A stretch of 64,000 nucleotides of DNA from Pocillopora damicornis (Eukaryota), in the NCBI RefSeq assembly GCF_003704095.1, contig NW_020845941.1, positions 248,001-312,000 of the forward strand. The letters are read 5' to 3'. The notes under the pieces were generated by a model that was not told where the DNA came from, did not search any database, and worked only from the letters and a program-made list of their open reading frames with translations. Shown here in pieces: positions 25,397 to 63,446 of the stretch (its first letter is position 1; each line of letters starts with the position of its first letter). Both the position numbers and the translations under genes were made by a program.

Positions 25397-28300
25397 CTAT
25401 ATAGACGATAGTGTGCTCCTTGGCGTTGGTATCGGCGGTTTTCCGTGTGAGCGATTAGGTAATCTTTTTAAATCTTTCACTGTGAATGGGTCCCTGGAAT
25501 CTTGCACGAGATTTTGATGCGAAGCCATATTAGGTTCCCCGCTTGCTTGACTGATATTGACGTAGGGAGGTTTATCCTTTCTCGTAATCTCATTCGGGGC
25601 AGGAAAAGAGCTTGGGCCATGTGCGTTGACAAGGTCCTCGGAAAGACTCCTCTGCCTCTCCTGTGATGGTGCTAGATTGACGTACGGCACGCGATTAACT
25701 TCCAGGAGCTTCCTTCTCAGAATTTCGATCAATTCCATTAATTCATCCGTGGTCCACTTCGTTTGCTGAATGGTCTTTTTAAGCTCACTTTTCATCTCGC
25801 ATTCATTCAATTCCACGCCGAAGGTGCTAGTGAAGTGAGTTCTGTACGACCAACACGTTTCGTTGGAATCTCCAGGATTTGGCCCATTTTCGTCGTTTTC
25901 TCGTCTGCTGCTGCCATGACTTCGCCCATTTTCGCGCTGTGAAGCACGGTCGAGTGGCATTACGGATTCTGCGTCAGTTGGTTCAATCGCAAAATGTGGA
26001 GATCTGTCGTGTGGTATTTCTGGTCTTCTTCCGTAGGTTTCCCCTTCACAATTTTCACTTATTTCTTGTTCTCTTGGATTTTGGTTCAGCCAAGTTGGGG
26101 TAGCTTGTCTTAAGGCGAAGGTTTCTGGCGCAGGCGAGCTCTGTTCAGATGTATTTGCTTGTGTGTGTGGTGCTCTTTCTTTCCCCGTTTGCTCTGGGAA
26201 CACGTTTCGAGGATTTTGTTCCTCAACCTCATTTTCTGTTTCCGAAGATCCTCCGCTTTCGAATTCTCTCAATCCCGTTTCCTGGGCGTTCACCGACTTA
26301 TTGCTATTCTTGGGTTTGGTCCCTGTGGCCAAGTTCTTTGATCTTTGATTTTGCAGGCGATTTATCTGGACGAGGGCTCTGTCTAATTTTGCCTGTGTCT
26401 CCAAATACTTTTTAATGTTAGTCATGGACTCGAAGTCATCATCGCGTGGACTAGATATCAAAATGTTGTCGCAAGAAGCAGCTTTTCTCGGTGGAATTCT
26501 CACCGAGTTGCTTTTTTCCTTCGGAGCCTGTTCTTTCTTTCTTCCCGCCCTGCTAGGATCTTGGCGGAACATTCTTGGCATTAACGTCAGCGACTGAAAG
26601 AACTTTCTCTTTGTGCTCTCTCCATTCATGCGGTGTTCTTCTTTGCTTTTTGCTCCAAGACTCGGTAATGAAATTTCGTTATCGTTTTCTGTGTGTTCAA
26701 AGAACATCTTTTTGGAACAATCAGGGTCGAGGTCATCGAAATTGTTGTTTTCCTCGTCACTTTGTTCAGAGGAGGCTTCCTCATCTTTCTGCATATTATG
26801 CTTTTTATTTGTATTTGCCTCGCTAGATTCAAAGTTCAAATCCAGATCGGCCTCCTTTTCTCTCGAACTTAGGGGGTCGTCTGTTGCCTCAGGAAGTGCT
26901 CCGTGTTCGCGGCGTGGTAAATCAGATCCTGTTTGCGCCGGTCGTAAAACGCGCACTGAGAATTGCTCGCGTTTTCTTTCAACTGGTAAACCTTCATCTG
27001 AAGGCACATTTGCATTTCTGTCGACGGATGGTTCGTAAGCTTTTCTTTTTGTGAAGGATGCCAAGAACAGAGGTTCTTCACTTTCATAGGGAATGTCTCC
27101 TGAAATTTGCATTTTACAGTTTACGTCGCCTACGTCGCTGTGTTTTGACCCTTCCTGCGGTTGTGACATGTCCTCTAGTAGCTTAACACAGCTCTGGCTC
27201 GGTGGTAAACTATCATCATTTAAGTCATTCGTCAGACTTTGTTCAGATAATACTACCTGCTTGTCTATTGTTTCAAAAGAATTTTCTTCCATTTCAGTTT
27301 CTTGTTTGTTGTCAAAATTCTTTGTTAAGTCCTCCTGGGAAGAAGCATGGGATCGTGTTGCAATCAAGGCCACCTTTGGCGGAAGGGGAGGTGCTTTCAT
27401 TTCCGAGAAGCTCTCTGGCTGAAACTTCTGAAAGCCTTTCTCCTTCGTTGCAGTTTCTTTTTTCATAGAGGGAGGATCAAGGGCAAACTCGAAGCCGACT
27501 CGTGAAACTTGCCTTTCTGTTGTTTCTATTCCTTGTGCGCAATCGAAAGGGAAACAAAAATGCTGTAACGACTCCAAAGAGCACCTCTTCACGGGATCAC
27601 TCGTAAAGGAAATACAGTTTGTGTTTGATAACTCATGTAGAACTGTTTCATTCGGTAATGCTTCTAGCAGCTTCTCGAATTCAGCTCCCCAGCGAGAAGT
27701 AAACCTCTCTCGAGACATACACTGGGCAACATTCATGTCTAGTGTCGATGGGAACATTAAAAGAATATTCTGTTCGCGAGTCGAAATGGCATAAACTACT
27801 TCTTCTTCAATCTCGCACTCCACGAGAATCTTTCCGAATATTGACCTCTGCTTTGCTCGAGGGTGTTCTGAAGAGCCGTCAACCATAGCTTTATTTCCAT
27901 AAGACACAACACGGACATTAACTGGAAGTGTGCAGTTCTGTAGAACCTCGTCTGTAGTAAATATTCCATGATTAGCGAGGACCTGAAACCTTCCTTCCAG
28001 GGTCAGAGGTAAATCCACTTGTACGGGATCTTTTAAGTTTACGATGAAACATCGTACAGTACTAAGGTTTAAATACGGGGGGTCTCGACTGATTTGCAAT
28101 ATATCTCCAGCGAGGAGGCCGAACAAAGGAACGTTCTCGACAATTCGAATGAACGCCGCAGAAGGAAGTTTTGCAATCGCGTCCAAAGTGGTGAACTCAT
28201 CTTGGGAATGTTCTGACACCAACTCTAACTTCAAATCACTTATTCTTGGCAAGCAGAGCGTTCTCCCACTACTTGAATGCTTTGCTTTTACTTTCCTCTC

Positions 28301-28486
28301 TCTTTCCACTTTGTAGATGATCAGTACGTCTCCAGTTTTAATGCTTTGATTCGCGGAGGTTCCACAAAATCCTTTGTCGACCTGGACCATCTGTGGAAGC
28401 TCAGACACATTTCGTGCGATGAATTCTTCAAGAGACATAACATGCGCCTCGCTGCTCAATGGCAGTGATAGTGATGGTTTTTCCAT
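25397..28486 (-). CDS. CABIT-domain adaptor 1 (Themis/GAREM-like, no SAM), 1029 aa, single exon
   Basis: N-terminal LEEFIARNVSELPQMVQVDKG and the CABIT core VRC-x10-VDLPLTLEGRF, followed by LPVNVRV. The long disordered tail has PPLPPK, two YVN motifs and PIPTPR. Confidence 0.88.
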   Translation of the reverse strand: MEKPSLSLPLSSEAHVMSLEEFIARNVSELPQMVQVDKGFCGTSANQSIKTGDVLIIYKVERERKVKAKHSSSGRTLCLPRISDLKLELVSEHSQDEFTTLDAIAKLPSAAFIRIVENVPLFGLLAGDILQISRDPPYLNLSTVRCFIVNLKDPVQVDLPLTLEGRFQVLANHGIFTTDEVLQNCTLPVNVRVVSYGNKAMVDGSSEHPRAKQRSIFGKILVECEIEEEVVYAISTREQNILLMFPSTLDMNVAQCMSRERFTSRWGAEFEKLLEALPNETVLHELSNTNCISFTSDPVKRCSLESLQHFCFPFDCAQGIETTERQVSRVGFEFALDPPSMKKETATKEKGFQKFQPESFSEMKAPPLPPKVALIATRSHASSQEDLTKNFDNKQETEMEENSFETIDKQVVLSEQSLTNDLNDDSLPPSQSCVKLLEDMSQPQEGSKHSDVGDVNCKMQISGDIPYESEEPLFLASFTKRKAYEPSVDRNANVPSDEGLPVERKREQFSVRVLRPAQTGSDLPRREHGALPEATDDPLSSREKEADLDLNFESSEANTNKKHNMQKDEEASSEQSDEENNNFDDLDPDCSKKMFFEHTENDNEISLPSLGAKSKEEHRMNGESTKRKFFQSLTLMPRMFRQDPSRAGRKKEQAPKEKSNSVRIPPRKAASCDNILISSPRDDDFESMTNIKKYLETQAKLDRALVQINRLQNQRSKNLATGTKPKNSNKSVNAQETGLREFESGGSSETENEVEEQNPRNVFPEQTGKERAPHTQANTSEQSSPAPETFALRQATPTWLNQNPREQEISENCEGETYGRRPEIPHDRSPHFAIEPTDAESVMPLDRASQRENGRSHGSSRRENDENGPNPGDSNETCWSYRTHFTSTFGVELNECEMKSELKKTIQQTKWTTDELMELIEILRRKLLEVNRVPYVNLAPSQERQRSLSEDLVNAHGPSSFPAPNEITRKDKPPYVNISQASGEPNMASHQNLVQDSRDPFTVKDLKRLPNRSHGKPPIPTPRSTLSSI

Positions 28487-29055: not shown

Positions 29056-29412
29056 TTAAAATCTCATAGTGTTTGTTCACTGTAATTCAGCAGCGCTGCC
29101 TTCATCAACACAGTAATTGGAGACATAAATCTTGTTTTATTATAAGTTTCTTACTAATCCAAGTCTTAACAGGATTTTTGCTTCGGTTTAGGTGTGTTCA
29201 GGAAATCGCAGTGATGAGATAATTAGCGTAGAAACAATGACCGGAAGTGAGTACGATTCTCAGAAACGGTAGTATTTTAGGACTGCGTTATCCTTCGTAA
29301 GTGTTTTTATATTTAAACAAAGTAATGATTACAAGAAATACTCATACAAACACCCAGCAGGCGTCAAGCGAATGATCACAGAATTTTTTTTCAAAACTTT
29401 CAAACAAAGGAA
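29056..29412. repeat. Non-coding direct duplication, copy 1 (copy 2 at ~31099-31354)
   Basis: The blocks ttaaaatctcatagt...cagcagcgctgccttcatcaacacagtaattg and caatgaccgg...ttcaaacaaaggaa appear in both copies. Copy 1 has about 100 extra bp. Confidence 0.9.
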
Positions 29413-31354: not shown

Positions 31355-31511
31355 ATCCATTGATTGATTTATTAATTGTTATCTCTCAGATAAAGTCTGG
31401 AGTTTGGTGGACCAAGAAATCGCTGGTGCTCTTAACATGTTGTAACTTCGAATAAGGAGTCATCCAGAAAGTCAAATCAAGGTTCAATTCTGCTGTTCAA
31501 ACGTATCCTTT

Positions 31512-33728
31512 TCACGCATCCCCTTTTAGGCGATCCAAATATTTTTGTATCTCTGCAAAGTCCACAAAATCGTCTTCTCTCCGAGGGGAGATGATTATGT
31601 TTTCTTCAGTTTGTGTGCGACGCGGCATCTCTGTCTGCTCCGCAGCTGGGAAACCGCAAGGTTGTGAGTGTTTAGACCACGAATTTTTGTCAGTGTTGTC
31701 AGTGCCTTCCGCCTTCTGAGGAAAGCTGTTTTTCTTTCGCATATCTGTTCGTGAAGATCCTCGATTTTCAATGTCACCGTTAATTGTGACACAATCCAAT
31801 CTTCTTTTTTCGAATTGTGTCACGGTATCACCAGCTCTTTCCGTTTCTTGTGTTGCGATAGGTGCATCCTCAGGAACCCTCATATCAACAGGCTCGAGAT
31901 AATACTCTTCTTGAAAGTTCTCTACGTTGGGCTGTATTCCATCCGTTTCTTTACCTCGCTGGTCTTCCATAAAAATGTATACTTCTTCTGTTTCCAGTGA
32001 ATAATTAAAGGATTGATCATTAGGTTCTAGATCAACTAATCTAAAAACACGTCCATCATCTTTGACTTCTGTATACACGTCATCGGCGATAACATCAATG
32101 TAGTAATCATCATTGCTCGCGTCCAATGCATCCTGCTTATTGGCCGCACGCTTTGTCCTCAGGTGTCTTTGCTCAACTCCTTTCCAGTCAGTAACGTCAG
32201 TTACTAAGTATGCCAAACCCTCACCGCACGGAGGAGTCCTTGGGGGCAATGGTGGTGGTGGTGATGATGTTTTTCTTAGAAATTCATGTTTTGGTGGTAG
32301 CTCGGGGCAAGCATCGTCGGAATCATCTTCTGAGGAACTTCTACACAACAGTGACCATTCCGAGTCAGAGAAGTGGTAGATTTGCGTTTTCGGTGATGGA
32401 TCCACAACGTTGCTGTTATTATCTCCCGGCACCTCATTTCCTGTGCCAACGCGCTTTCTAGGCGTGGGAATTGGACGACGACGAGCTAGAGGATGGCTTT
32501 CCTCCGTGACGTCGTGTGCTGCGTGGTGTCGCGCGTTGTATGACGTCGTGTGTTGCGTGACGTCGTGTGGCGTTGATCTTGCGTTGTGAGACATCTTATG
32601 ATGAAGATTGAAGACGGCATCATGGGCTTCCTCGTACGCCTTTGACATTTTGTCGTTCAATTTTTTGTCAATTTCAAAGTTTTCATAGTTTCTTTCAGCT
32701 TCAGAGGAAGACTGTGACGAGGACCCTGACCTTCCGTATTTACGCTCTGTTTCCAGTTTGGTGTTTACACAAAGACCTTCAGTTCTTTCATTTGTTTTGT
32801 TCACGAACGTTTTGTTTTCAGTTTTTTCGGGTTTTGAAAGCGAAGGAGATTGAAGTAGCTCGAGATTGAAATGTATGACGGGATATGTTGTGAAATAAAA
32901 AGAGTTGGCTTTAAGTCTGTCGAGTCGATCCAACGCTTTCTCAGACACCGCAAGATGCTGTCTGCAATGTTTGATCTTTTCACTTGTTTCTTCCGTGACT
33001 TTAAACCCGCAACCAACTTTAATGTCTAATGTTTTTGGGAACACGCTTAGCGAGTAAAGGTTATCAATCGAAGCTGCAAACACCATTTCAACTTCTCTTT
33101 CGCCCCTTAAATCGATGTTTCCCAAGTTTGATAAATGTCGGGTGCAAGCTTCGAAGTAGTCGTCTTCTAGAGAAACAAATCGAACACTCACTGGCAGTGG
33201 ATAGTTGGCCATAACCTCCTCTAGCTGGTATTCTCTTGCGCCTAAGAGCGGCTGAAATGTCCCTGATAGTTCCAGTGGCAGCAAAACCTCTTCAAAACTA
33301 TCCATGCGACTTATTAGGCATTTCACGAGGTTACTATGAAATTTGTCGCTCTTTAAAATTATCAGTGTTGTTTCTGAATTGATTCCAACCGAAGGAATGT
33401 CCTCCAGAACACGGAAATTCTTCGTTTGATATCCAGTGCATAACTCTCTTATTGAACAGTATTTTTTGTGGCACCCTGAAGGAATAAGCTGAATCTTGGT
33501 TTTTGAATTCTTCGGCACACAAAGCTCTCGATTGAACTGATCGATCGCAACAATCATTTTTTCCTTCTCGACTTTGTATATAACGAGTACGTGGTCTACT
33601 TCAAGCGTTTCGTCAACATCAGGCCCAAAATATCCTTCTACGATATTGACTGCTATGGGAAGAGCAGAGCCATAACACTGAAGAAATGTTTTAAGGTTTA
33701 CAGCATTTGCTGGCCCATCGAACTCCAT
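31512..33728 (-). CDS. CABIT-domain adaptor 2 (no SAM), 738 aa from the first ATG, single exon
   Basis: LKTFLQCYGSALPIAVNIVEGYFG...VKCLISRMDSFEEVLLPLELSGTF...YPLPVSVRF. Closest paralog of gene 3. The ORF-track start at 33812 is TTG; the first ATG is at 33728. Confidence 0.88.
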   Translation of the reverse strand: MEFDGPANAVNLKTFLQCYGSALPIAVNIVEGYFGPDVDETLEVDHVLVIYKVEKEKMIVAIDQFNRELCVPKNSKTKIQLIPSGCHKKYCSIRELCTGYQTKNFRVLEDIPSVGINSETTLIILKSDKFHSNLVKCLISRMDSFEEVLLPLELSGTFQPLLGAREYQLEEVMANYPLPVSVRFVSLEDDYFEACTRHLSNLGNIDLRGEREVEMVFAASIDNLYSLSVFPKTLDIKVGCGFKVTEETSEKIKHCRQHLAVSEKALDRLDRLKANSFYFTTYPVIHFNLELLQSPSLSKPEKTENKTFVNKTNERTEGLCVNTKLETERKYGRSGSSSQSSSEAERNYENFEIDKKLNDKMSKAYEEAHDAVFNLHHKMSHNARSTPHDVTQHTTSYNARHHAAHDVTEESHPLARRRPIPTPRKRVGTGNEVPGDNNSNVVDPSPKTQIYHFSDSEWSLLCRSSSEDDSDDACPELPPKHEFLRKTSSPPPPLPPRTPPCGEGLAYLVTDVTDWKGVEQRHLRTKRAANKQDALDASNDDYYIDVIADDVYTEVKDDGRVFRLVDLEPNDQSFNYSLETEEVYIFMEDQRGKETDGIQPNVENFQEEYYLEPVDMRVPEDAPIATQETERAGDTVTQFEKRRLDCVTINGDIENRGSSRTDMRKKNSFPQKAEGTDNTDKNSWSKHSQPCGFPAAEQTEMPRRTQTEENIIISPRREDDFVDFAEIQKYLDRLKGDA

Positions 33729-35835: not shown

Positions 35836-38800
35836 TCACACACTTGGGAGTTCTGATACAAGTAGTTCATGTAAGTTACGGGTTTCTTGTTCGCCAGTAA
35901 TTTTTTCAGACGTGGCCTCTCTCTTTCTTTTGTCCGTTATTTGAAGCACATTCTGTTTGAGTTGGTCTGAATCACTTTCTTCATCTTCGACATTAACATA
36001 AACAGAATCTTCCTCCTCGCTAGGGTTGTCAAGTTGCAGATAACGTGATACTCGGTCGCCTTTTGTCACCTCTACAGTTTTGGAGGAGATTACACCAAGT
36101 CTGTCTTCATCGTCCACTCTCTCACTGACTCGATTAGTTTCCACATACTGATAGGGTTCATCATTTATATCACAGTATGCAAATTCGTCCTCATCAAAGT
36201 TTTTGAGCGACATTTGGGGTTCGTGATTAATATAATGTCTGTCGCAACATTCTTCGTAATCGTCGTCATCGTCCAAATCTGAACTATAGGGTTTTTCTTT
36301 TTCGACCTGTTTTGACTGATAGGGTATATCATTCATATCACAGTATGCAAATTCTTCTTCATCAAAGTTTTTGTGCAACATTTTTGGTTCTTGATTGATA
36401 AAATGTCGGTCGCAACATTCTTCGTAATCGTCGTCATCGTCCGAATCTGAATCATAGGGTTTTTCTTTTTCGACGTGGCGTGGGAGAGTATTGGAACAAT
36501 CATCTTGATTACGCTTTGAATTCCCACAGCTCATGTTCTCAGGAATTTCTTCGTAGACCTGATCTTCTTCGTCGTTGGAGTTATGGGTGGGGAATTTGTC
36601 AATTATTCCCTGCCCTTGGGGACTAATGGGATAATCTCCTCGATCAAGCTTCGCCCTCAGAGGACCAAAGTTCAGGTTTAGGGTTGAGGGCAGTCCTGTT
36701 TGTTTAGTCTGCATTTTCCCTATAGAATTTTCTTTTTTGTGTAATTTGGCTTTTCTTTGTGAATGTTCACAAAATGGTTTGGCGGAGTCGAGGTCATTGT
36801 GATTTTTGTCATGGGTGTTGCTCTTCGTTTTTTTCGAATCTTCATCGCGCTTAAGTTGTGAGGCGTTACCAGCTGGTAATTGCTGCTTATGGGCTTCTAC
36901 TAGTTTCAGCTCGTCTTTTGTTGCGACTTGTTTTTCTAAATCGGCTACCCTCGCATTAACTTTCCTTAGTTCATTCATGAGTTTGAAATGCCGTTGGATA
37001 TCCTTAAAATCCATAAAATCATCTTCGTTTGGGCTGGAAATGATGAAATTCCTCTCATCCCTCTGATTGGTAGCAATCGCTGTGTGATGACGTGTTTTGG
37101 TGACAACAGGTCTTGGTTGTGTACCAGAAATATTTGTTGCCGTCTCAATCGCTGCCGTTTTCTTCTTTTCTGAAGTTTCTTGGGGCCCTTCCATCTCCTG
37201 GTAAGATGCCTCTTTTACCTTACTCTGATTGTCGAAACTTGTTGGTGCCTTGGCTTTATCTCTTCTACCACCATCTCCGAGTTCAGGATTCTCGCCGTGG
37301 TTTAAAAGACACGCTGCATTGGAATCAGTGCAATCTGCAACCTCATGGTATGTTTTCCGGTCTTCCAGGTTTTGACGGTCTGGTTTCATTTCAAGGTACG
37401 TTGGTTCGTCATTCAGTGGACAAGTCAAATGTTCGGCATCATGGAGTCTGAAGACCTGTCCATCATCTCTTGCATTCGTGTAAACAGAATAGTCCTCCAC
37501 TATTTTTGTGACCTTTTCTTCAACTGATGTGCACTCAGCATTTCTTTCCACTTCTTCATAAATGTCCGTTCCATCCTGATCAGAGTCAGAAGAAGCCTCG
37601 TTTGGGTACTTTTCAGCCAATCCTGAATCCTTACATTTCATATCAACATAGGTGTTGTCGTCGTCGTTCAGTTGACAAACACCACCTGGTACAAAACTTT
37701 TCCCATCATCCATGGGATCGGTGTACAGAGCTCTCTCTTCAACTGCTTCCCAGTCCGTGACGTCAACCACTAAGTAGGCCAAATCTTCAGCCAATGCTGA
37801 ATTAACCGGTCTTGGAGGTAGAGGTGGTGGACTTTCGCCTAAAGCAGCATTTCTTTCTTCACTTGTCTCCAAAGCTCTTAGAAAAAGGGGCTTGGGTGGC
37901 AAGTCAGGGCCGCGCTCATAGTCATCATTTCCAGAGGAACTGCTAGACTGCGAAGATACAGACCTCCCGGTTAAATCATGATCTGAGCTTGAGTCTTGTG
38001 TTTGTGAAGACACAGGTTCGTCGTTGGAGTCATCCTGACACCGCAACGACATGGCATTGAGACGCTTCCTTGGTTTGGGAACCGGTTTCCAGTTAGTTTC
38101 AGGGCTTTGAATTTGCGTGACGTCCGAGTTTATCAACGGTGGTTTTGCTTGGCGGAGAGTCTTTGGGGGAAGAGGTGGAGCCTCATCTGCGACCTTTTCT
38201 AAAGTTTCCGAATCAACACTCTTAACAGTATTCCATTCAATTTCTATGTTTTCATAGTCGTCTTCATCTTGACACAAAGATTCTGAGATGCACTCTGATT
38301 GTGAACGGTCACGCTCTGGTTCTTTCGTCATGGCTGTCTCTTCAGGTTTTACGCCGGTTGTTTTCGTCTTCTTCGGAATCAGTGCTACTGACGGGGGTTG
38401 GAGCGATTCCAATTCAAAGCACCTAACTGGGAAGGCGCTTAAAAATGCAGAACTAGCAATTATTCTGTCAAGTCGTTTTAATGATTTTTCGTTCTCTGCA
38501 AGACTCTGTCTGCATGCTTTGATCTTTTTGCTTGTGTCTGCCGTGAGTCTGAAACCACAACTAACATAAATTTCTAGTGTTCTTGGGAAAACATACAGGG
38601 ACAATTGATCATCAGGCAAAGCTGCAAACACCATTTCTACTTCGGTTTCTTTGGTTAGACACACATTCCCCGGATTTGTCAAGAGTCCACGGCCTGGATC
38701 AGTATTCGCTTGTGATTGATAAACAAATCGAATGTTGACAGGAACCTGAAACTGCTCAAGAACCTCTTCCAGGTAGTACTCCCTCGCATCCAAGAGCGGC

Positions 38801-39267
38801 TGAAATTTACCTCTTAGTTGAATTGGTAGAAAAATTTCCTTGGAGTTATGCAAACCAATCAGTTCACATTTCACGGAGTTGTTACGAATAGGTCGGCCGC
38901 CTAACAGTATCAGCGTTGTTTCTGAAGAAATTCCATGCGAAGGAATGTCTTCTAAAACGCGGAAATACAGCGTCCGATGAACATCGAATAATTCTTGTAA
39001 TGAGTTGTATTCTTCTTCACTCCCGGGTGGAAGAAGCAAAACTTTCCGTTTCGAATTTCGTGGTATACAAACCTCTTGTTTGTAGTGATCAAGGCCTATT
39101 AGCATTTTCTGCTTCTCGACTTTGTAGATAACGAGTATTTGGTCAGCCTCTAAAGTGTCTTCCCCATAAAAACCCTCTGTGATCTTGACTACCTTGGGGA
39201 GAGTCGAGCCATAGCATCGAAGATATGTCGATAGATCGACGGGAACAACTTTACTGACGGAGTCCAT
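35836..39267 (-). CDS. CABIT-domain adaptor 3 (no SAM), 1143 aa, single exon
   Basis: LSTYLRCYGSTLPKVVKITEGFYG...VKCELIGLHNSKEIFLPIQLRGKF...VPVNIRF. The acidic tail has many Tyr motifs, PxxPxR/K motifs and a coiled coil. Confidence 0.9.
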   Translation of the reverse strand: MDSVSKVVPVDLSTYLRCYGSTLPKVVKITEGFYGEDTLEADQILVIYKVEKQKMLIGLDHYKQEVCIPRNSKRKVLLLPPGSEEEYNSLQELFDVHRTLYFRVLEDIPSHGISSETTLILLGGRPIRNNSVKCELIGLHNSKEIFLPIQLRGKFQPLLDAREYYLEEVLEQFQVPVNIRFVYQSQANTDPGRGLLTNPGNVCLTKETEVEMVFAALPDDQLSLYVFPRTLEIYVSCGFRLTADTSKKIKACRQSLAENEKSLKRLDRIIASSAFLSAFPVRCFELESLQPPSVALIPKKTKTTGVKPEETAMTKEPERDRSQSECISESLCQDEDDYENIEIEWNTVKSVDSETLEKVADEAPPLPPKTLRQAKPPLINSDVTQIQSPETNWKPVPKPRKRLNAMSLRCQDDSNDEPVSSQTQDSSSDHDLTGRSVSSQSSSSSGNDDYERGPDLPPKPLFLRALETSEERNAALGESPPPLPPRPVNSALAEDLAYLVVDVTDWEAVEERALYTDPMDDGKSFVPGGVCQLNDDDNTYVDMKCKDSGLAEKYPNEASSDSDQDGTDIYEEVERNAECTSVEEKVTKIVEDYSVYTNARDDGQVFRLHDAEHLTCPLNDEPTYLEMKPDRQNLEDRKTYHEVADCTDSNAACLLNHGENPELGDGGRRDKAKAPTSFDNQSKVKEASYQEMEGPQETSEKKKTAAIETATNISGTQPRPVVTKTRHHTAIATNQRDERNFIISSPNEDDFMDFKDIQRHFKLMNELRKVNARVADLEKQVATKDELKLVEAHKQQLPAGNASQLKRDEDSKKTKSNTHDKNHNDLDSAKPFCEHSQRKAKLHKKENSIGKMQTKQTGLPSTLNLNFGPLRAKLDRGDYPISPQGQGIIDKFPTHNSNDEEDQVYEEIPENMSCGNSKRNQDDCSNTLPRHVEKEKPYDSDSDDDDDYEECCDRHFINQEPKMLHKNFDEEEFAYCDMNDIPYQSKQVEKEKPYSSDLDDDDDYEECCDRHYINHEPQMSLKNFDEDEFAYCDINDEPYQYVETNRVSERVDDEDRLGVISSKTVEVTKGDRVSRYLQLDNPSEEEDSVYVNVEDEESDSDQLKQNVLQITDKRKREATSEKITGEQETRNLHELLVSELPSV
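36147..36474 (-). repeat. In-frame 168 bp (56 aa) tandem duplication in the gene 3 tail
   Basis: VEKEKPYxSDxDDDDDYEECCDRHxINxEPxMxxKNFDExEFAYCDxNDxPYQ occurs twice, with an offset of exactly 168 nt. Confidence 0.95.
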
Positions 39268-49047: not shown

Positions 49048-50862
49048 TCAAGAGGTTTTAGGAATCCAACCGTCTCGGATAAATTTGGTGAGCTTTCTTC
49101 GATGCAATGCATTGGAGATCCCAAGATCTTTCATCATTTCTTCATCCACATCTAGCAAAAGTTTTCCGTCGACTGATTCTTGTTCAAAAGTCTCAACGTA
49201 CTGGCCCAAACCTAGCTTGGTTAGCCATTCACAGACTTCGTTCACCGTGAGCTCATTCCGAAGTTCTTGGCTCAATGTATCTCGAGCTCCACCATTATCT
49301 CTTGGGTTCCTGACACTGGAAACTGTTCTGGAAGGGGTGAAATCAACTGATGATTCCGCCTTGTGCGAAGTCGACTTGGTAGGGGTGGTCGGTGCACTTT
49401 TCTCATTATTTAGTCCAGCGGACGCCACAGTTGGTGAAACAGGGTGGTGAGAGCTTGGAGGCTGTACCTCTCCAATTTTTAAAGCAGGTTTTACCGTAGG
49501 CTTTTTGGCAAGTTGCGGTTTGGAAGAAGAAGCAGACTGACCAGGGGAAAGATATGTTGGGGGCCGTTCCTCCTTGCTGAGAGGTCTCTTATTTTGAGTC
49601 ACATTTGGCCTTATGGCAACTGGAGGTAAAACCAGGTTCAGGCTCTTCTTTTGATCCTCAGGATATGCTTTTGTAGATTTGGACTTGTTGAATGAAAGGC
49701 ATTCATAATTATCATCGTATAGAGCCTCTTCCTCTTCATTGTTTAGGACTAAAGATTTCCCTTGCGATGGTTTTGCTTTGGGTGGCTTCTTGGCGACTGG
49801 AGGGGCAGCCGATCCAACGGCTGCCTTGTTGACAAAAGGCTTGGGTGGTGCTGTATATCGATCCTCAAATTGTGATTTGTCCACCGTTGTTTTTTGACCT
49901 GAAATTGTCTTTGTTGGTGTTCGTGATGGAACAGGAGGAGCTATTTCGTCATAAGTTTCATCATCCGACGATACACTACAGGTTTCAACGCACTGACCGA
50001 TCTCAAAAAGCCATGATGCATCTTCGTCTCGGCCTGTGATTACTGACTCAATATTTATTTTGTTGTCGATCAGCTGACAAATTTCAGCGAGCACCTTTGG
50101 ATCTATGTTTGACTCGATTCGTCTGACTAGAACTTCCAAGCTAATTGGAATTGTCAAGACATTCAAATGCTTTCCGATTAAGGTGTAAGCTATTAAAACC
50201 TTTTCCTTTACTATCTCCTTGATAACAATCGTAAGGCTCTTCTCGATGCGCTTTTCTCCGATAAACTTCCCGATGGAACCTGCACGAACACGCACTCGAG
50301 TTGGCAGAATATGTCGATCTGTGACGTCTCTTAAAGAAGAAGGATGAACTTCCTCAAGGGTCTCGAAATGTCCTCGCTGTTCACAAGAGAGGAATATCGG
50401 CCTTTTTGTCCCAACCACCTTGCATTTAAGTTCCGTGCGGCCTTGACTACTTGGTGAAGCTTCTTGAAGCGAAAGTATGTCGCCGGCGTTGATGTTACTT
50501 TGAGGTATATTGTAGAGCGAGCGAACATATTTCGGAAAGTCGTCAATAAGGTCTTGGACGGTTTCATACTCGTGGTTGCATCTGTTTGGAATACTTTCAA
50601 ATATTTTGTCAGGATAATTTAGGGGAATCTTGTAGAAATTCCCCTTCTGATCGCGAGCAAGTGCTTGAGGTAGATCTTTCATGGCGTGAAGGTGCACAAT
50701 TTCGCCTTGAGACCACGATCGTTGGATTGAATTGTTTGATTCATATCCTTCCACGATTTCAGCTGTTTCAGGAAGATGACATTCTGTTAGAAACTCGCAG
50801 AGAAACAAGCCATCGAAGTCGTTGTTATTTTGACTCCACGGCATCTCGAGACTCCTCTTCAT
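49048..50862 (-). CDS. CABIT + SAM adaptor 5 (GAREM-like), ~600 aa, single exon
   Basis: MPWS...LCEFLTECHLPETAEIVEGY...LKCKVVGTKRPIFLSCEQRGHF...ILPTRVRV, then a Pro/Lys-rich linker and the SAM VCEWLTKLGLGQYVETFEQESVDGKLLL...FIRDGWIPK. Start ATG is at 50862 or 50844. Confidence 0.9.
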   Translation of the reverse strand: MKRSLEMPWSQNNNDFDGLFLCEFLTECHLPETAEIVEGYESNNSIQRSWSQGEIVHLHAMKDLPQALARDQKGNFYKIPLNYPDKIFESIPNRCNHEYETVQDLIDDFPKYVRSLYNIPQSNINAGDILSLQEASPSSQGRTELKCKVVGTKRPIFLSCEQRGHFETLEEVHPSSLRDVTDRHILPTRVRVRAGSIGKFIGEKRIEKSLTIVIKEIVKEKVLIAYTLIGKHLNVLTIPISLEVLVRRIESNIDPKVLAEICQLIDNKINIESVITGRDEDASWLFEIGQCVETCSVSSDDETYDEIAPPVPSRTPTKTISGQKTTVDKSQFEDRYTAPPKPFVNKAAVGSAAPPVAKKPPKAKPSQGKSLVLNNEEEEALYDDNYECLSFNKSKSTKAYPEDQKKSLNLVLPPVAIRPNVTQNKRPLSKEERPPTYLSPGQSASSSKPQLAKKPTVKPALKIGEVQPPSSHHPVSPTVASAGLNNEKSAPTTPTKSTSHKAESSVDFTPSRTVSSVRNPRDNGGARDTLSQELRNELTVNEVCEWLTKLGLGQYVETFEQESVDGKLLLDVDEEMMKDLGISNALHRRKLTKFIRDGWIPKTS

Positions 50863-52128: not shown

Positions 52129-53841
52129 ATGATGTTCAGCCATATCGTCTGGAGTGACAAATCTTGTACTCTCAAAGAATTTGTCGACGAATACCCGCTT
52201 CCGCAACTAATCAAAGTCGAAAGCGGGGTCTACAATGACGACGAGGCGAGAACGCTATCAGCAGAGCAGATTCTCACCCTACATATCACCAAACGGAGCG
52301 ACAAGGTGTTAGTTAGGGCTGCCGAAAACAAACAGTATTTCCTACCGGTAACATGTCCACATAAAGTTGAGATTCTTCCTAAATTTTGTCAAGACAAATA
52401 TTACAGTGTGGAAGATATTACCAGCTCTTTTACAGCCCCAGATTTTAAATTTATTCGTGTGGTACATAACGGTCCGCCTTCGCTTCGAATACGAGCTGGG
52501 GACATATTAAAACTCAAGAAAACTGAAGAGGAAAATCGGGTTAAGTATCTTGAATGTGAGTTTTATAATAAGACTCAAGACTCTGTAATGCTTCCATTAG
52601 AATTCAAAGCTGCCTTCGAGCCCTTAGCCAGCCCAGAAGAGTATCATTTGCAAGAAGTTCTGAGTTCGTTTACACTTCCTGTTCGCGTGAAGTTTACCTC
52701 CAGTGACACTATAATACAAGATGCTGCGAACACTAACATTGAATTGCAATCGCTCGGTTCGGTTCTCTTAAAAGAAATTCGAGAGGAAATTACAGTTATT
52801 GCTACAAGTCGTGACGACGAAACTGTCACCGTTTTAATGATTCCTTCTGATTTGGATGTGAAAGTGAATCCTGCTCTCGGGGCCGTAAAAGGTGATTCAA
52901 CGTACGCAAGATTCTGTAAAGAAATCCACGATGGAACAGAACTTTCCAAAATCGACCTTTTGAATAGTTCGAAATTGCTAGAATATTCTGAGGAACCTAC
53001 CGTTGATGTTGTCTATGATTATGTTGAGATAGGTCCACCACTTCCTCCTCGGTCAGACTCCAAACGAAATGAACCGACAGATTCCGATGAAGATTATGAA
53101 GATGTAGACCTACCTCCCCCCAGACCACCAAAACCATCTTCTAAACCAAACCTGAGATCAGCCCATCAAAACGAGAAAACCGATGGTGTTTTCCCTTCCA
53201 TGTGCTCCAGATCTTACAGTTCTGAGAAACCATTATCTTTTAATGAAGATGGTGACGATGACAGTGAGGATGACGATGGCGAGTATGAAGATTTTGACCC
53301 GGTCTTTGGGAGCTCAGATGACGAAGAGGATGTCTATTCACAGACAGATCTACCAGGGGCAGAAACGCCTAGTGACAGAGGAAAAGAAAAACGTAGTGCC
53401 CTTGAAGAACCTGAAAAACTTAATCTCAAGACACGAGTTTCAGCCATTCTCAAGAAGGCCATTGCCAAGTCACCTACGTCTCCACCCGCCTCCCGATTGC
53501 CCTCTGCCACTTATGCCAACATCCCAACCCAAAGGCTGCGTCCACCCCCACAACGACAATCACCTGAGAAAAGTCTTTCCACTTCACCTTCCCCTGTGGC
53601 TTCTCATTTATCCCAGGGGTACCCCTATGATCTATCAAGTCTTTCTGTTTCAGAAGTGGGAGAATGCCTCAAAAAGCTTAACCTGGGAGAGCACGTCAAA
53701 GCTTTTGAAAAACAAACCGTTGATGGGAGTCTTCTGAAGAATCTAAGTGAACAAGAACTGATAGACCTTGGAGTAACTAAATTATTTCAAAGGAATAAAC
53801 TTCTTCTTTTTATACAGGGATGGAGGCCTAAAATGAATTAA
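52129..53841 (+). CDS. CABIT + SAM adaptor 6 (GAREM/Themis-like), 570 aa, single exon
   Basis: IVWSDKSCTLKEFVDEYPLPQLIKVESG...LECEFYNKTQDSVMLPLEFKAAF...TLPVRVKF; PPLPPR and PPPRPPKP; SAM ending FIQGWRPKMN. Confidence 0.92.
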   Translation: MMFSHIVWSDKSCTLKEFVDEYPLPQLIKVESGVYNDDEARTLSAEQILTLHITKRSDKVLVRAAENKQYFLPVTCPHKVEILPKFCQDKYYSVEDITSSFTAPDFKFIRVVHNGPPSLRIRAGDILKLKKTEEENRVKYLECEFYNKTQDSVMLPLEFKAAFEPLASPEEYHLQEVLSSFTLPVRVKFTSSDTIIQDAANTNIELQSLGSVLLKEIREEITVIATSRDDETVTVLMIPSDLDVKVNPALGAVKGDSTYARFCKEIHDGTELSKIDLLNSSKLLEYSEEPTVDVVYDYVEIGPPLPPRSDSKRNEPTDSDEDYEDVDLPPPRPPKPSSKPNLRSAHQNEKTDGVFPSMCSRSYSSEKPLSFNEDGDDDSEDDDGEYEDFDPVFGSSDDEEDVYSQTDLPGAETPSDRGKEKRSALEEPEKLNLKTRVSAILKKAIAKSPTSPPASRLPSATYANIPTQRLRPPPQRQSPEKSLSTSPSPVASHLSQGYPYDLSSLSVSEVGECLKKLNLGEHVKAFEKQTVDGSLLKNLSEQELIDLGVTKLFQRNKLLLFIQGWRPKMN

Positions 53842-60800: not shown

Positions 60801-61340
60801 GTTGTATTTTATAAGCCTCTTGATCTCCTACTAGCTAGAGGTACAAGACCAGATAAAAAAAAGAAATGTAAATGCACTCCTGTAAAAAGTGATTCCAGGG
60901 AGTATAAGACTAATTTGGAGTGCAGAAAAGTCAGATGTGGAGCAAACCGTGATAAAAATTGGGCAAAGTCGTCTAAGTATGCAGGCTGTACCTCTAGCCA
61001 GTTGTATTAATTTTTCTAAGCCCCTTCAGATCCTACCAGCTAGAGGTAAAAGACCAAATAACAAAATAAATGTAAACGTACTCCTGTAAAAAGTGATTCC
61101 TAAGAGTGTAAGACAAATTTGGAGTGCAGAAAAGTCAGATGTGGAGCAAACTGCAGTAAAAATTGGGCAGAGTCGACTAAGTATACAAGCTGTACCTCAA
61201 GCCGGTAGTATTTTATAAGCACCTTCAGATCCTACCGGCTAAAGGTACAAGACAATAGAAACTTCATCTTGGAGATCTTTCTAATCAGTAGCACTATGAC
61301 AAGGGAATTATAGTGGCAATACTATTCATTAGTTTTGTTT
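57842..61340. mobile_element. Foldback-type element: long inverted arms (~57842-59100 and ~59880-61340) made of ~200 bp tandem subunits
   Basis: The reverse complement of ~61080-61340 matches 57842-58110 closely (aaacaaaact..tgaatagtat.gccactataat.cccttgtcatagtgctactg.ttagaaagatc...). Subunits start at ~57931, 58130, 58331 and 58978, with mirror copies at ~61245, 61045, 60840, 60640, 60315 and 60130. No ORF. Confidence 0.88.
59275..59320 (-). ncRNA. Minimal type I hammerhead ribozyme (Penelope/retrozyme type)
   Basis: Minus strand: ACUGCA-CUGAUGA-GGCC cagaa GGCC-GAAA-CAG ua CUG-UC-UGCAGU. This gives stem I, an intact core, stem II, a palindromic stem III and a GUC cleavage triplet. Confidence 0.85.
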
Positions 61341-61468
61341 GGAATGTGGCGGACCAAGGTTCATCCCGATAGAAATTTAACTCAAGGAAAATCGAAAAGA
61401 GATTCTACCGAAGAGTTCAGAGTCACTTTAAAAGTGAGAAAGAATTTCAGGTGGCGCCGAACACTCTT

Positions 61469-61621
61469 TCCCTCACCGCCCCCTTACCCCCATCCCCTCC
61501 TCCCCACTACCCCCACCCCTCCCCCCTACCCCCTTACCCCCTCCGTCCTTACCCCCTTACCCCCCTCCCCCTTGCTCCCTCCCCCCTTACCCCCTTTCCC
61601 TTACCCCCACCCCCTCCCCCT
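61469..61621. repeat. C-rich low-complexity tract (CCCCTTA/CCCCT-like), G-quadruplex-prone on the minus strand
   Basis: About 150 bp of C3-C6 runs separated by 1-4 nt. Confidence 0.85.
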
Positions 61622-61990
61622 CTGTGCATCAGCCAAGCTTGATAAGCTTACTTATCCTTTTTTTCATCCTTTTTTGGAATAAATTAAATCAATACAAAAT
61701 GAAAGATGAAGGACTGGGAATTAAGCTTCCAAAAAATTGAATTTTAATGTGTAAGCTAGATTTAAGGAAGTAATCTTTCAATCATGACATGATATGTTAC
61801 AGCGCATCTCGACCTATACTTCTAGTTAAAAGCTGAAACGATTATTTCGTTTATCAGTGTTTCATACGGCTCATCATGTGCAAGATCATCCCGCAATGAC
61901 AAGGACTGTGTATTTACAAACACCTACCCACCTGAAAAGTCTTTACATTTATCGGAGAAAGTAAACAGACCTTGACACCTAGTTTTAAAC

Positions 61991-63446
61991 ATGGCCCGCC
62001 GTAAAGAAGGTAAGAATTGTTTTAATTGACAAACACGAGAACTTGAAATCAGAAAAATACTTAGAAGGGCCAAGTAATGCTTCTATTTCTCTATTTACAG
62101 CTGCCCTTCACAAGCCAGATTCATTGGAGGAAACTCTGGCCAACTTCATAATTCGATATCAGCCTCCGTACATTGCTCAAGTGTTGGAGGGAGTCGATAA
62201 TGGAGTTTTTTCCGTATCAGTGAACGAATTGTTGACAGTACACAAAACCGTGCAGCTGAGGCGAATCCGAATGAGAGATTCAAAAGGCAAGCACTATTTC
62301 CTGCCCGTTGACAACTCGGCGCGCGTTGAAATTGTGCCTAGGACTCGTACACGCCTTGCTAAAGACTTCGATCCTCATCTGATCCGCACAGCTAGGTTTC
62401 TTCGCGTCTTGAGAGATGTTCCTGAGCTGAAACTCGACGATGGAGATATTTTAGAACCCATTTTTTTCGAATCTACGAGGAGCACTGAAGCGGAAACTTT
62501 AAAATGCAAAATACTTCGTGAACCAGGGAAGGAAATTAGGCTTCCACTTCACTGGGGAGTACCTCTTGAGTTATTACACGACTTTGACCCAAGAAGCTAC
62601 ACTCTAAGATATGTAGCAGATAATATTGCTTTTCCAGTGGCTGTGAGATTTGTTGAGAACGTGGTATCCTACTCTGATGTTGTAGCAACCTTAAGAGGGG
62701 AATTTTATTTCGAAGAAGTTGTCGAGGAGACCATTGTTATCGTAACTACAAAAGTAAACCAGGATCAGTTAACGATTCTAAAACTCCCCCTTGATCTGCC
62801 GCTGACCTTACATCCTATCAGAAAGCTTAATTGCGATTCAAAATACATTGTTCGATATTGGCAATATCTACGGGAAGAGTTGGATAGGCTTGAAAACCAG
62901 ATGACAACTGCTGATAATGATCTTCTTTCCTCGAGTCGTTTTGAAAATATGGGGCGAGTTGTACGGCTTTATAAGGAAAGTGAAGATTACCTAAAGGGAA
63001 TGAAAAAATTCCAGCCAGTTAAAAAGGCTTCAGACGAAGGCGAGGTCGTTCCAAAGAATCTTTGTGAAGATTTCTACGAGCCAATGATGCCCTCCCTGGT
63101 ACGCAAGCAAGAGGAATGCAGGCTGTTTCAAGAGGAGGTTGAACCGAATTACGAAGCTATGGAGCCCTGCATCTCAGGCAAACACGACGAGTACGCTACG
63201 GTTTTCGAGGGGGCCATCAACAATTACGAAACAGTAGAGCCCTTATCTTCCTCCGTTCCGTATTCGAGTGCAAAGAGTCGACAGAGCTTAAACAGTAAAA
63301 GCGCTCAGAGCCTCCGAGAGGAACCTTTCTATTGCTCGCTGACTTCCATTTTTCATGGAACCTCACCCTTAGAAAGACCATCACATGTGTATGTGAAGCT
63401 GGAACAAAAATCGTTCACGAAGTCGCCAAGAAAAACAAAATCTTAA
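61991..63446 (+). CDS. CABIT-domain adaptor 7 (no SAM, short Tyr-rich tail); join(61991-62009, 62101-63446)
   Basis: aaacATGGCCCGCCGTAAAGAAG|gtaag ... ttacag|CT gives an in-frame phase-1 intron of 91 bp. The protein reads TLANFIIRYQPPYIAQVLEG...LKCKILREPGKEIRLPL...FPVAVRF. Confidence 0.82.

What the first reader, a model, noticed from the sequence alone, without database searches (positions are those of the whole stretch)
25397..63446. Cluster of seven diverged, almost intronless CABIT-domain (Themis/GAREM-like) adaptor genes
Seen: seven long ORFs (orientation -,-,-,+,-,+,+) share a ~270 aa N-terminal module: LxxF/Y...LP...V..G, GD.L.[IL], a core phi-x-C-x(n)-phi-x-LP-phi-xxx-G-x-F, and LPV.V.F. 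Each is followed by a mostly unrelated, disordered Pro/Tyr/acidic tail. Six have single-exon CDSs, whereas the neighbouring NUP93 has about 27 exons. Established: this core is the CABIT signature of Themis/Themis2, GAREM1/2 and fly Serrano; in vertebrates these are a few dispersed, multi-exon Grb2/SHP-phosphatase adaptors. Inference: an old tandem expansion with three architectures (CABIT+new motif, CABIT+SAM, CABIT+short pY tail) forms a combinatorial phosphotyrosine adaptor locus in a probable cnidarian, plausibly for immune or symbiosis signalling. I do not know of such a cluster having been described.
Basis: partly seen in the sequence, partly recalled or inferred. Interest (0 to 1): 0.88.

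Follow-up and report, generated by a model that had tools for sequence, protein, structure and literature searches.

The report
Tandem array of coral CABIT adaptors
A stony-coral genome carries seven neighbouring, fast-evolving genes of the Themis/GAREM (CABIT-domain) signalling-adaptor family in one conserved block; this is an old lineage-specific expansion of a known family, with one undescribed domain layout, and not a new kind of system.

Summary
Seven long ORFs at 25.4-63.4 kb all carry one N-terminal CABIT domain. Five pass Pfam's cut-off, and g4 and g7 are recovered by leave-one-out profiles (E 5e-22 and 2e-27). The family profile hits both CABIT domains of solved THEMIS (E ~1e-13).

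There are three architectures:
- g4-g6: CABIT, proline-rich linker and SAM, which is the GAREM layout.
- g1-g3: long SAM-less tails with a conserved acidic motif followed by a heptad-repeat segment.
- g7: short, with no SAM and no SH3 ligand.

The genome (234 Mb, probably Pocillopora damicornis) has only one other CABIT gene, which is unlinked. The array lies between NUP93 and a DEP/FH2 gene, and both flanks are syntenic in other corals. Each member except the younger g2/g3 pair has its own orthologue group. The SAM-less class reaches Nematostella.

PolyA RNA assemblies hold g4-g6, and a spliced RNA contig confirms g7's 91-nt intron. RNA for g1-g3 was not tested. Array genes are under purifying selection but evolve faster than the unlinked copy (g3 dN/dS 0.46 against 0.16).

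The adaptor function (SH3 and SH2 docking) is inferred from conserved PPLPP[KR] and YVN, YxxM and YEEL motifs. An immune or symbiosis role has no support. A sister note (s1-786007) covers the g1-g3 motif on this same DNA.

The parts
25397..28486 (-). g1: 1029-aa single-ORF gene. CABIT domain at about residues 14-310, then a long SAM-less tail.
   Evidence: ORF. Pfam CABIT 63 bits. Own orthogroup with ERZ_1085. Two conserved P-Y-V-N-[LI] sites at Y935 and Y975. The exact protein is found in 18 Tara coral metagenome (DNA) scaffolds.
26312..26464 (-). g1 conserved acidic motif (N-I-L-I-S-S-P-R-D-D-D-F...) plus the following heptad-repeat segment, about residues 675-725.
   Evidence: Tail BLAST hits among g1, g2 and g3. 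Sequences. Conserved in 31 of 32 coral relatives.
31512..33728 (-). g2: 738 aa from the first ATG (the ORF runs up to 33812). CABIT plus a SAM-less tail that ends in the conserved motif.
   Evidence: g2 and g3 are a younger duplicate pair, with residual 72% DNA identity at 32901-33101 against 38449-38649.
31515..31625 (-). g2 C-terminal conserved motif (E-N-I-I-I-S-P-R-R-E-D-D-F-V-D-F...).
35836..39267 (-). g3: 1143 aa. CABIT plus a long acidic, Tyr-rich SAM-less tail. Internal 168-nt tandem duplication at 36147-36477.
   Evidence: PPLPPK overlaps an exact PxxxRxxKP. dN/dS 0.46 against the orthologue in L017.
36868..37035 (-). g3 conserved motif (N-F-I-I-S-S-P-N-E-D-D-F-M-D-F...) plus a heptad-repeat segment, about residues 745-800.
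43745..46312 (+). g4: 855 aa. Diverged CABIT that lacks the Cys, a linker, and a C-terminal SAM (46100-46309).
   Evidence: SAM_1 32.6 bits with no Pfam CABIT hit. Leave-one-out HMM E 4.8e-22. Orthologue ERZ_798 in L005. Conserved YEDM and YEEL motifs.
49048..50862 (-). g5: 604 aa from the ATG. CABIT, proline-rich linker, and SAM (49057-49266).
   Evidence: Pfam CABIT 61.5 bits and SAM_1 61.9 bits. Orthologues are the Oculina 723- and 712-aa genes. Conserved YEEL motif.
52129..53841 (+). g6: 570 aa. CABIT (1-270), disordered linker (276-491), and SAM (495-565; DNA 53611-53832).
61991..62009 (+). g7 exon 1: ATG plus 16 nt, followed by a GTAAGA donor.
   Evidence: Sequence. Spliced RNA contig in run X1.
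62101..63446 (+). g7 exon 2, which is the rest of the 454-aa CDS. Diverged CABIT plus a short tail with three YExM-P repeats. No SAM and no PxxPx[KR].
   Evidence: Leave-one-out HMM E 1.9e-27. AF2 model m52fd34f22d41 at pLDDT 85.8. A 1435-nt RNA contig covers 62195-63629. Sister to the g5 group with support 1.0.
15786..23999 (+). Left boundary: the multi-exon NUP93 (Nic96) gene, convergent with g1.
   Evidence: Eleven collinear Nic96 exon hits. Its 3' exons lie next to the g1-like gene in another coral, L005, at 91-92% aa identity.

Best explanation
This is an ancient, syntenically fixed tandem array of seven paralogous CABIT-family genes in a scleractinian coral, probably Pocillopora damicornis. 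It derives from a GAREM-like ancestor with the layout CABIT, proline-rich segment, SAM.

Shown here:
- Every gene encodes one CABIT domain.
- g4-g6 keep the GAREM layout. g1-g3 lack SAM and carry a conserved acidic motif plus a heptad-repeat segment instead. g7 has lost both SAM and the SH3 ligands.
- The array is bounded by NUP93 and a DEP/FH2 gene, as in other corals.
- The members are separate, old orthogroups.
- g4-g7 are transcribed.
- The genes tested are under purifying selection but evolve faster than the single unlinked, well-conserved paralogue g8.

Inferred mechanism: like GAREM and THEMIS, the proteins are non-enzymatic cytoplasmic scaffolds.
- The CABIT domain, together with the PPLPP[KR] site directly behind it, recruits an SH3 adaptor of the Grb2 type.
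- Tyrosines in the disordered tail, once phosphorylated, dock SH2 proteins. The conserved motif set differs by paralogue: YVN (Grb2 type) in g1 and g2/3, YxxM (PI3K p85 type) in g2/3, g4 and g7, and YEEL (Src-family type) in g4 and g5. The paralogues would therefore route tyrosine-kinase signals to different effectors.
- SAM (g4-g6) or the heptad-repeat segment (g1-g3) would provide self-association.
For: Family membership: Pfam CABIT is over the cut-off in 5 of 7. Leave-one-out HMMs recover all 7. The family profile hits THEMIS CABIT1 and CABIT2 in PDB 9uou, 9i3p and 9iaz at E 3e-13 to 6e-12. The g7 domain folds confidently (pLDDT 85.8, pTM 0.79). Its partial structural hits are the same ones the THEMIS CABIT2 crystal paper reports: SH3 domains and 3g1j for the head, and IdeR, ScaR and FeoA for the discontinuous core. 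The Cys lies in the head.

Architecture: SAM is found only in g4-g6. The g6 model shows CABIT, a disordered linker and SAM. Architecture follows clade: 0 of 44 leaves in the SAM-less clade have SAM and 27 have the motif.

Array and age: the genome holds only 8 CABIT loci, 7 of them here. Orthologue pairs and flanking synteny are seen in Oculina and another coral. Nematostella P0168 falls inside the SAM-less clade with support 1.0.

Expression: 11 RNA runs from at least 4 studies hold 0.60-0.78 of the words of the g4-g6 stretch, whose coding share is 61%. A spliced g7 contig is present, and intergenic bins have zero depth.

Selection: in the same species pair, g3 has dS 0.30 and dN/dS 0.46, and g8 has dS 0.33 and dN/dS 0.16. 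CABIT domains alone give 0.24 and 0.09. Pocillopora-Oculina CABIT identity is 89% for g8 and 49-67% for array genes.

Motifs: PPLPP[KR] in g1-g6 and PxxxRxxKP in g3. Nearly invariant PLPPK, PELPP and PPLPPR across 32 relatives. Conserved YVN, YEN, YxxM and YEEL motifs per orthogroup.

Background from papers: Grb2 SH3N prefers PxxPxR and SH3C prefers PxRPxK or PxxxRxxKP, and the THEMIS proline-rich site cooperates with CABIT (PMC13381594). GAREM binds Grb2 through pTyr105 and pTyr453 and through SH3 (PMC13729540).
Against: - No binding, phosphorylation or localisation data exist for any of these proteins. The SH2 and SH3 partner assignments rest on textbook consensus motifs that also occur by chance in Pro- and Tyr-rich disordered sequence.
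- g7 has no SH3 ligand, and g4 lacks the conserved Cys, so not all members need work alike.
- RNA evidence for g1-g3 was not obtained.
- The g4-g6 RNA evidence is an aggregate share of words, not resolved per gene.
- Trees were a quick IQ-TREE run and FastTree on about 250-300 columns, midpoint rooted, with no bilaterian outgroup. A GAREM-like ancestor is therefore an inference from architecture.
- The heptad-repeat segment was read by eye only (3-4 spacing of hydrophobic residues).
Confidence: 0.72

Rival explanations
1. The array is a co-regulated combinatorial hub for immune, allorecognition or symbiosis signalling, in which paralogues co-assemble through SAM-SAM contacts into mixed scaffolds with different docking codes.
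For: Array genes evolve several-fold faster than the unlinked paralogue. The tails carry different conserved SH2-type motifs. The SAM domains resemble polymer-forming SAMs such as DGK-delta, Shank3 and SARM1. The g6-SAM with g5-SAM pairing test gave weak support: score 0.56 against a best control of 0.01. That mark was reached by 51 of 78 solved complexes and 2 of 108 mismatches, but scores of 0.60 or under were seen in only 5 of the 78 solved complexes and in all 4 mismatches that passed. The runs agree in at least 97% of contacts, and the partner's pLDDT is at least 88.
Against: There is no expression data by cell type or condition, and no link to any receptor. Faster evolution is equally expected for redundant duplicates. 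The SAM-SAM pass may reflect memory of solved SAM complexes, and it does not say which family members bind. Four of the seven genes have no SAM at all. No paper links the family to coral immunity.
Confidence: 0.15
2. Some or all members, especially the SAM-less g1-g3 and g7, do not work in phosphotyrosine signalling. They would use the CABIT domain for another protein-protein role, for example the polarity and tube-length function that I recall for the Drosophila single-CABIT protein Serrano. This is from memory and was not checked here.
For: The biochemical role of CABIT is still unclear. [quoted passage not shown] The g1-g3 acidic motif matches no known module.
Against: g1-g3 keep nearly invariant class II SH3 ligands and YVN or YEN sites across corals whose tails are otherwise only 33-46% identical. 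g7 keeps three YExM-P repeats in all three orthologues.
Confidence: 0.1
3. The extra copies are decaying or neutral duplicates, or processed retrocopies, without function.
For: The coding sequences are intronless. The domains of g4 and g7 are highly diverged. g6 shows dN/dS 0.77 against a very close relative, though from only 22 differences.
Against: The ORFs are intact over 454-1143 codons, and each has orthologues in other coral genera at the same position. dN/dS is below 1, with CABIT domains at 0.09-0.35. polyA RNA is present and g7 is spliced. There are no CABIT fragments in the spacers.
Confidence: 0.03

Closest known systems
GAREM1 / GAREM2 (FAM59A/B), the vertebrate Grb2-associated regulators of ERK/MAPK
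   Same: g4, g5, g6 and the unlinked g8 share the layout: one N-terminal CABIT domain, a disordered proline-rich linker with SH3 ligands and Tyr motifs, and a C-terminal SAM (layout as described in PMC4082722).
   Different: There are seven linked copies plus one unlinked, against two dispersed genes in vertebrates. The coding sequences are single-exon. Four members have lost SAM. Orthology to bilaterian GAREM was not tested, because no bilaterian sequence could be retrieved. Equivalence of the GAREM Tyr105 and Tyr453 sites was not assessed.
THEMIS / THEMIS2
   Same: The CABIT domain is homologous: the family profile hits both THEMIS CABITs at E of about 1e-13. A proline-rich site sits directly after the domain, as in THEMIS, followed by a disordered tail with tyrosines.
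   Different: THEMIS has two tandem CABIT domains that together clamp Grb2 SH3C. Each coral protein has one. The coral ligand is PxxPx[KR], the Sos1/SH3N type, rather than PxRPxK. THEMIS has neither SAM nor the acidic motif.
Drosophila Serrano (Sano), a single-CABIT protein without SAM (from memory, not checked here)
   Same: One CABIT domain and no SAM, as in g1-g3 and g7.
   Different: There is no evidence of shared tail motifs or orthology. Its reported role is in polarity and tube length, not Grb2 signalling.
Multisite docking scaffolds (Gab, IRS, Dok, FRS2): functional analogy only
   Same: A folded N-terminal targeting domain is followed by a long disordered tail bearing PxxP and several pY-x-x-x docking motifs for Grb2, p85 and Src-family SH2 domains.
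   Different: The N-terminal domain is unrelated (PH or PTB against CABIT). No homology is implied.

Membership tests
CABIT domain family (Pfam PF12736) | Significant match to the CABIT profile | tested here: met
   g1, g2, g3, g5 and g6 score 59-83 bits against a 24-bit cut-off. g4 and g7 fail Pfam but match a profile built from the other six at E 4.8e-22 and 1.9e-27. The family profile hits THEMIS chains at E 3e-13.
CABIT domain family (Pfam PF12736) | Mostly beta, two-subdomain fold: an SH3-like head inserted in a core built from the N- and C-terminal segments | tested here: inconclusive
CABIT domain family (Pfam PF12736) | Conserved buried cysteine in the head subdomain | tested here: met
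   Present in 6 of 7 genes. In the g7 model it is residue 135, inside the head. g4 and its orthologue have lost it.
GAREM subfamily | Single CABIT, proline-rich region and C-terminal SAM | tested here: met
   Met by g4, g5 and g6, and by the unlinked g8. Not met by g1, g2, g3 and g7, which have no SAM anywhere in the window.
GAREM subfamily | Phosphotyrosine- and SH3-dependent binding of Grb2, and of Shp2 | not testable with these tools
   Only motif-level evidence is available: PPLPP[KR], PxxxRxxKP and YxN.
GAREM subfamily | Orthology to bilaterian GAREM in a rooted tree | not tested
   No bilaterian CABIT sequence could be fetched. All named hits are anthozoan.
THEMIS subfamily | Two tandem CABIT domains (CABIT1 and CABIT2) | tested here: not met
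   Each protein has one significant CABIT match. The second stretch in g3 is insignificant, with i-E 2e+02.

The most novel reading that the evidence does not exclude
The array is a cnidarian-specific signalling toolkit. The paralogues would be co-expressed scaffolds that hetero-oligomerise, through SAM in g4-g6 and through the new acidic motif plus heptad-repeat segment in g1-g3. Each would present a different SH2/SH3 docking code downstream of a lineage-specific receptor system such as allorecognition, symbiont uptake or innate immunity. The IISSPxEDDFxDF motif would be a new docking or regulatory module of CABIT proteins.
Probability: 0.12. Interest if true: 0.7.

Novelty: new variant of a known kind. 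Interest (0 to 1): 0.42.

Why it matters
CABIT proteins (THEMIS, GAREM) are important but mechanistically unclear regulators of tyrosine-kinase signalling, and the domain structure was solved only in 2024-2026.

- Eight single-CABIT genes are found in a coral, seven of them in a conserved block with three tail architectures. This offers a natural series for asking what a lone CABIT domain does, and which partner motifs co-evolve with it.
- The array shows that the GAREM layout predates bilaterians and was elaborated independently in hexacorals.
- For coral biology it adds a set of fast-evolving, expressed signalling adaptors that current annotations mostly label as uncharacterised.

It does not open a new class of system. 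Tandem expansion of signalling genes is common in coral genomes.

Tried and rejected
- **Direct fold match to THEMIS.** Foldseek on PDB and the wide VIA-align search with the full g6 model returned only SAM domains. With the g7 CABIT-only model they returned no THEMIS chain. The entries 9i3p, 9iaz and 9uou seem to be absent from the fold libraries, so only indirect agreement could be shown.
- **Atlas search** with the g3 motif segment gave no usable hit.
- **Hidden SAM exon** for g1-g3 or g7: none in the window or in the next 10 kb.
- **CABIT pseudogene fragments** in the spacers: none.
- **Nematostella SAM-only neighbours as diverged CABIT genes:** rejected by hhalign (probability 0.1) and by the wider profile.
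- **An N-terminal SAM exon for g7**, as in the Oculina annotation: no counterpart in the window. Instead the RNA contig supports a 19-nt exon 1.
- **Transcript evidence for g2 and g6 from transcript-sized public contigs** (L011, L015): both are collinear with genomic DNA, so they are uninformative.
- **Rfam:** no hit in the window.
- **Johnson 2009 (PMC2908989):** not held in the library.
- **Bilaterian relatives:** none were retrieved by the three word-seeded searches. The deep search lists only its best 150 hits. Of the ten I looked up, only two carry a name (Nematostella and Actinostola), so none could be identified as bilaterian.
- **The joined g7 protein** was translated only inside a script, to check the reading frame. 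It was not sent to any search or fold. Exon 2 alone was used, by reference.

Full report
**What is in the sequence.** Window 25397-63446 holds seven long ORFs in the orientation -,-,-,+,-,+,+.

| Gene | Coordinates | Strand | Length |
|---|---|---|---|
| g1 | 25397-28486 | - | 1029 aa |
| g2 | 31512-33728 (from the first ATG) | - | 738 aa |
| g3 | 35836-39267 | - | 1143 aa |
| g4 | 43745-46312 | + | 855 aa |
| g5 | 49048-50862 (from the ATG) | - | 604 aa |
| g6 | 52129-53841 | + | 570 aa |
| g7 | exon 1 61991-62009, exon 2 62101-63446 | + | 454 aa |

The seven N-termini align over about 290 residues with 11 invariant columns (A1). The only DNA-level similarity left between paralogues is a 201-nt stretch of g2 and g3 at 72%. 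The spacers hold no CABIT fragments.

**Family membership.**
- Pfam CABIT (PF12736) is over its 24-bit cut-off in g1, g2, g3, g5 and g6 at 59-83 bits. g4 and g7 get no CABIT hit.
- A profile built from the other six genes finds g4 at E 4.8e-22 and g7 at E 1.9e-27. All seven are recovered in leave-one-out tests.
- The family profile hits solved THEMIS chains 9uou, 9i3p and 9iaz at E 3e-13 to 6e-12, with separate matches to CABIT1 and CABIT2.
- Each coral protein has a single CABIT domain.
- The name-giving cysteine is present in six genes. g4 and its orthologue in another coral have lost it.

**Structure.**
- The AF2 model of g6 has a confident, mostly beta domain (1-270, pLDDT about 90), a disordered linker (276-491, pLDDT below 50) and a confident SAM (495-565, pLDDT about 96).
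- The g7 domain folded alone gives pLDDT 85.8 and pTM 0.79.
- No THEMIS chain came back from either fold library, so a direct superposition was not possible.

**Three architectures that follow phylogeny.**
- SAM_1 is present only in g4, g5 and g6. A SAM profile finds no further SAM-coding ORF in the window or in the next 10 kb.
- g1-g3 share a tail motif of the form N-I-x-I-S-S-P-x-[ED]-D-D-F-x-[DS]-[FM]-x-x-I. It is followed by about 30 residues with 3-4 spaced hydrophobic residues, which I read by eye as a coiled coil.
- That motif is conserved in 31 of 32 coral relatives (A3). This agrees with the sister note s1-786007. Pfam and the Atlas give no name for it.
- In a 173-leaf tree, the SAM-less clade (44 leaves, support 1.0) has 0 proteins with SAM, 27 with the motif and 42 with PxxPx[KR]. 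The g4, g5, g6 and g8 groups mostly have SAM. The g7 group (3 leaves) has neither SAM nor an SH3 ligand, and it is sister to the g5 group with support 1.0.

**The tails are not unrelated.** The paralogues' tails show little overall similarity, but they share short linear motifs.
- g1-g6 each carry a PPLPP[KR]-type class II SH3 ligand shortly after the domain. g3 also has an exact PxxxRxxKP.
- PLPPK, PELPP and PPLPPR are nearly invariant across the SAM-less relatives.
- Within each orthogroup a few tyrosines are conserved in otherwise diverged tails:

| Orthogroup | Conserved Tyr motifs |
|---|---|
| g1 | two P-Y-V-N-[LI] |
| g2/3 | DYEN, AYLVVDV, YvdM |
| g4 | YEDM, YEEL |
| g5 | YEEL |
| g7 | three YExM-P |

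- g3's tail contains a 168-nt internal tandem duplication that doubles a YEEC / Y-I-N / YCDM block.
- By textbook SH2 specificities these are Grb2-type (YxN), p85-type (YxxM) and Src-family-type (YEE[IL]) sites. This is established knowledge that was not tested here.
- The literature gives Grb2 SH3N a preference for PxxPxR, and SH3C a preference for PxRPxK or PxxxRxxKP. In THEMIS the proline-rich site directly follows the last CABIT helix and cooperates with the domain (PMC13381594). GAREM binds Grb2 through SH3 and through pTyr105 and pTyr453 (PMC13729540).

**Gene structure and expression.**
- g1-g6 are uninterrupted from ATG to stop.
- The long g7 ORF has no ATG until codon 77. Upstream, a 19-nt exon (ATG plus 16 nt, with a GTAAGA donor) and a 91-nt intron ending in a polypyrimidine-CAG acceptor restore a 454-aa frame.
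- Four RNA runs from four studies were laid on 58001-63900. A 267-nt contig of polyA run X1 joins 61878-62007 to 62099-62235, skipping 91 nt with GT..AG ends and with no mismatch. A 1435-nt contig of X5 covers 62195-63629.
- The intergenic bins 58001-58394, 60956-61152 and 61350-61743 have zero depth in all four runs, so these libraries do not carry bulk genomic DNA.
- For g4-g6, 11 RNA runs from at least 4 studies hold 0.60-0.78 of the sampled words of 43745-53744, where the coding share is 61%. This is aggregate evidence that all three are in mRNA.
- RNA for g1-g3 could not be tested. The public contigs I fetched are collinear with genomic DNA.
- The joined g7 protein was not used in any search or fold.

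**Organism, copy number, synteny and age.**
- The assembly has 234.35 Mb in 4393 contigs. This matches the 234-Mb Pocillopora damicornis assembly (PMC6208414).
- The exact g1 protein occurs in Tara coral metagenome scaffolds.
- The genome has only eight CABIT loci: the seven here and g8 on contig C464, a single-ORF CABIT+SAM gene.
- NUP93 lies at window 15786-23999 on the + strand, with 11 collinear Nic96 exon hits.
- In another coral (L005) the order is g4-like, g2/3-like, g1-like and then NUP93 3' exons at 91-92% aa identity.
- In Oculina (L006) the order is two g5-like genes plus a CABIT fragment, then g6-like, g7-like and a DEP/FH2 gene. The start of that DEP/FH2 gene matches DNA about 2.8 kb beyond this window.
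- In the trees, each array member groups with its own orthologue from another coral across long branches. The exception is g2/g3, which is a younger split.
- Acropora and Montipora proteins are among the closest relatives of g6, and the Montipora protein falls in the g6 clade of the tree.
- Nematostella P0168 falls in the SAM-less clade, and an Actinostola group is sister to the g6 clade. Several duplications are therefore at least as old as the coral-anemone split.
- The Nematostella locus has one CABIT gene flanked by three genes that carry the same type of C-terminal SAM but no detectable CABIT.
- These trees are quick or FastTree runs, midpoint rooted, and have no bilaterian outgroup.

**Rates and selection.**
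- Between Pocillopora and Oculina, the CABIT domain of g8 is 89% identical. The array genes are 49-67% identical.
- g8 has one-to-one orthologues in Actinia and Nematostella at 43-44% identity.
- For one species pair (contigs from the same sample, with similar dS of 0.30 and 0.33), dN/dS is 0.46 for g3 (CABIT 0.24, tail 0.58) and 0.16 for g8 (CABIT 0.09, tail 0.23).
- g2 and g6 against very close relatives give 0.23 and 0.77, from few differences.
- The array genes tested are therefore constrained, hence functional, but they evolve about three times faster than the unlinked copy.

**Mechanism (inferred).** These are most likely non-enzymatic scaffolds of the GAREM/THEMIS kind.
- CABIT plus the adjacent proline-rich site would engage an SH3 adaptor.
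- Tail tyrosines would dock SH2 proteins according to a paralogue-specific motif set.
- SAM or the heptad segment would give self-association.
- A single test of g6-SAM with g5-SAM gave weak support only: score 0.56 against a best control of 0.01. The mark was reached by 51 of 78 solved complexes and 2 of 108 mismatches, but scores of 0.60 or under were seen in only 5 of the 78 solved complexes and in all 4 mismatches that passed. The runs agree in at least 97% of contacts, and the partner's pLDDT is at least 88. Because SAM-SAM complexes are already solved, the pass may be from memory.
- Nothing found here links the array to immunity or symbiosis.

**Novelty.**
- Already known: the family reaches cnidarians, and GAREM has the layout CABIT+PRR+SAM (PMC4082722). 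Tandem duplication is pervasive in corals (PMC10236652).
- Apparently not described: the conserved NUP93 | seven-gene | DEP-FH2 block, the SAM-less class with its acidic motif, the stripped-down g7 type, and the rate contrast with g8. No paper in the searchable library links CABIT, GAREM or Themis to corals.
- I rate it a new variant of a known kind, of moderate interest.

Noticed in passing
window 58500-58950: A dispersed repeat of about 410 bp with inverted termini and an internally deleted form (1-125 joined to 331-411). There are at least 375 candidate copies genome-wide, many at 94-95% identity, so it looks like a MITE. It explains the very deep, chimeric pile-up of RNA contigs and the roughly 205-nt 'joints' seen at 58624-58830.
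   Followed up: partly
window 57914-58518 and 60322-61212: Two short tandem arrays of units of about 200 bp (3-4 copies, 63-87% identical) in the g6-g7 spacer.
   Followed up: no
window 29056-29437 and 31099-31380: A direct repeat pair (78 nt at 95% and 203 nt at 88%), about 2 kb apart, in the g1-g2 spacer just downstream of g2.
   Followed up: no
window 36147-36477: A 168-nt in-frame tandem duplication (90% identical) inside the g3 tail. It doubles a block with YEEC, Y-I-N and YCDM motifs.
   Followed up: partly
L006:15296-15745 and L006:3346-4428 (Oculina patagonica chromosome CM126638.1): A stand-alone ORF ends in a cluster-type SAM domain (85 bits) just upstream of the g7-like gene, and the annotation fuses the two. 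There is also an unannotated partial CABIT ORF between the two g5-like genes. Neither has a counterpart in this window.
   Followed up: partly
L009 (Nematostella vectensis OW051997.1, 3.70-3.73 Mb): One CABIT gene is flanked by three single-ORF genes of 450-570 aa. They carry the same type of C-terminal SAM, but their N-terminal parts show no CABIT similarity. They may be very diverged relatives or an independent SAM family.
   Followed up: partly
window 10000-12000: A patch richer in G+C (0.415 against about 0.35 around it) holds two minus-strand ORFs of 139 and 145 aa at 10314-10733 and 10816-11253, upstream of NUP93. It was not examined. An assembly gap (N run) lies at 9474-9560.
   Followed up: no
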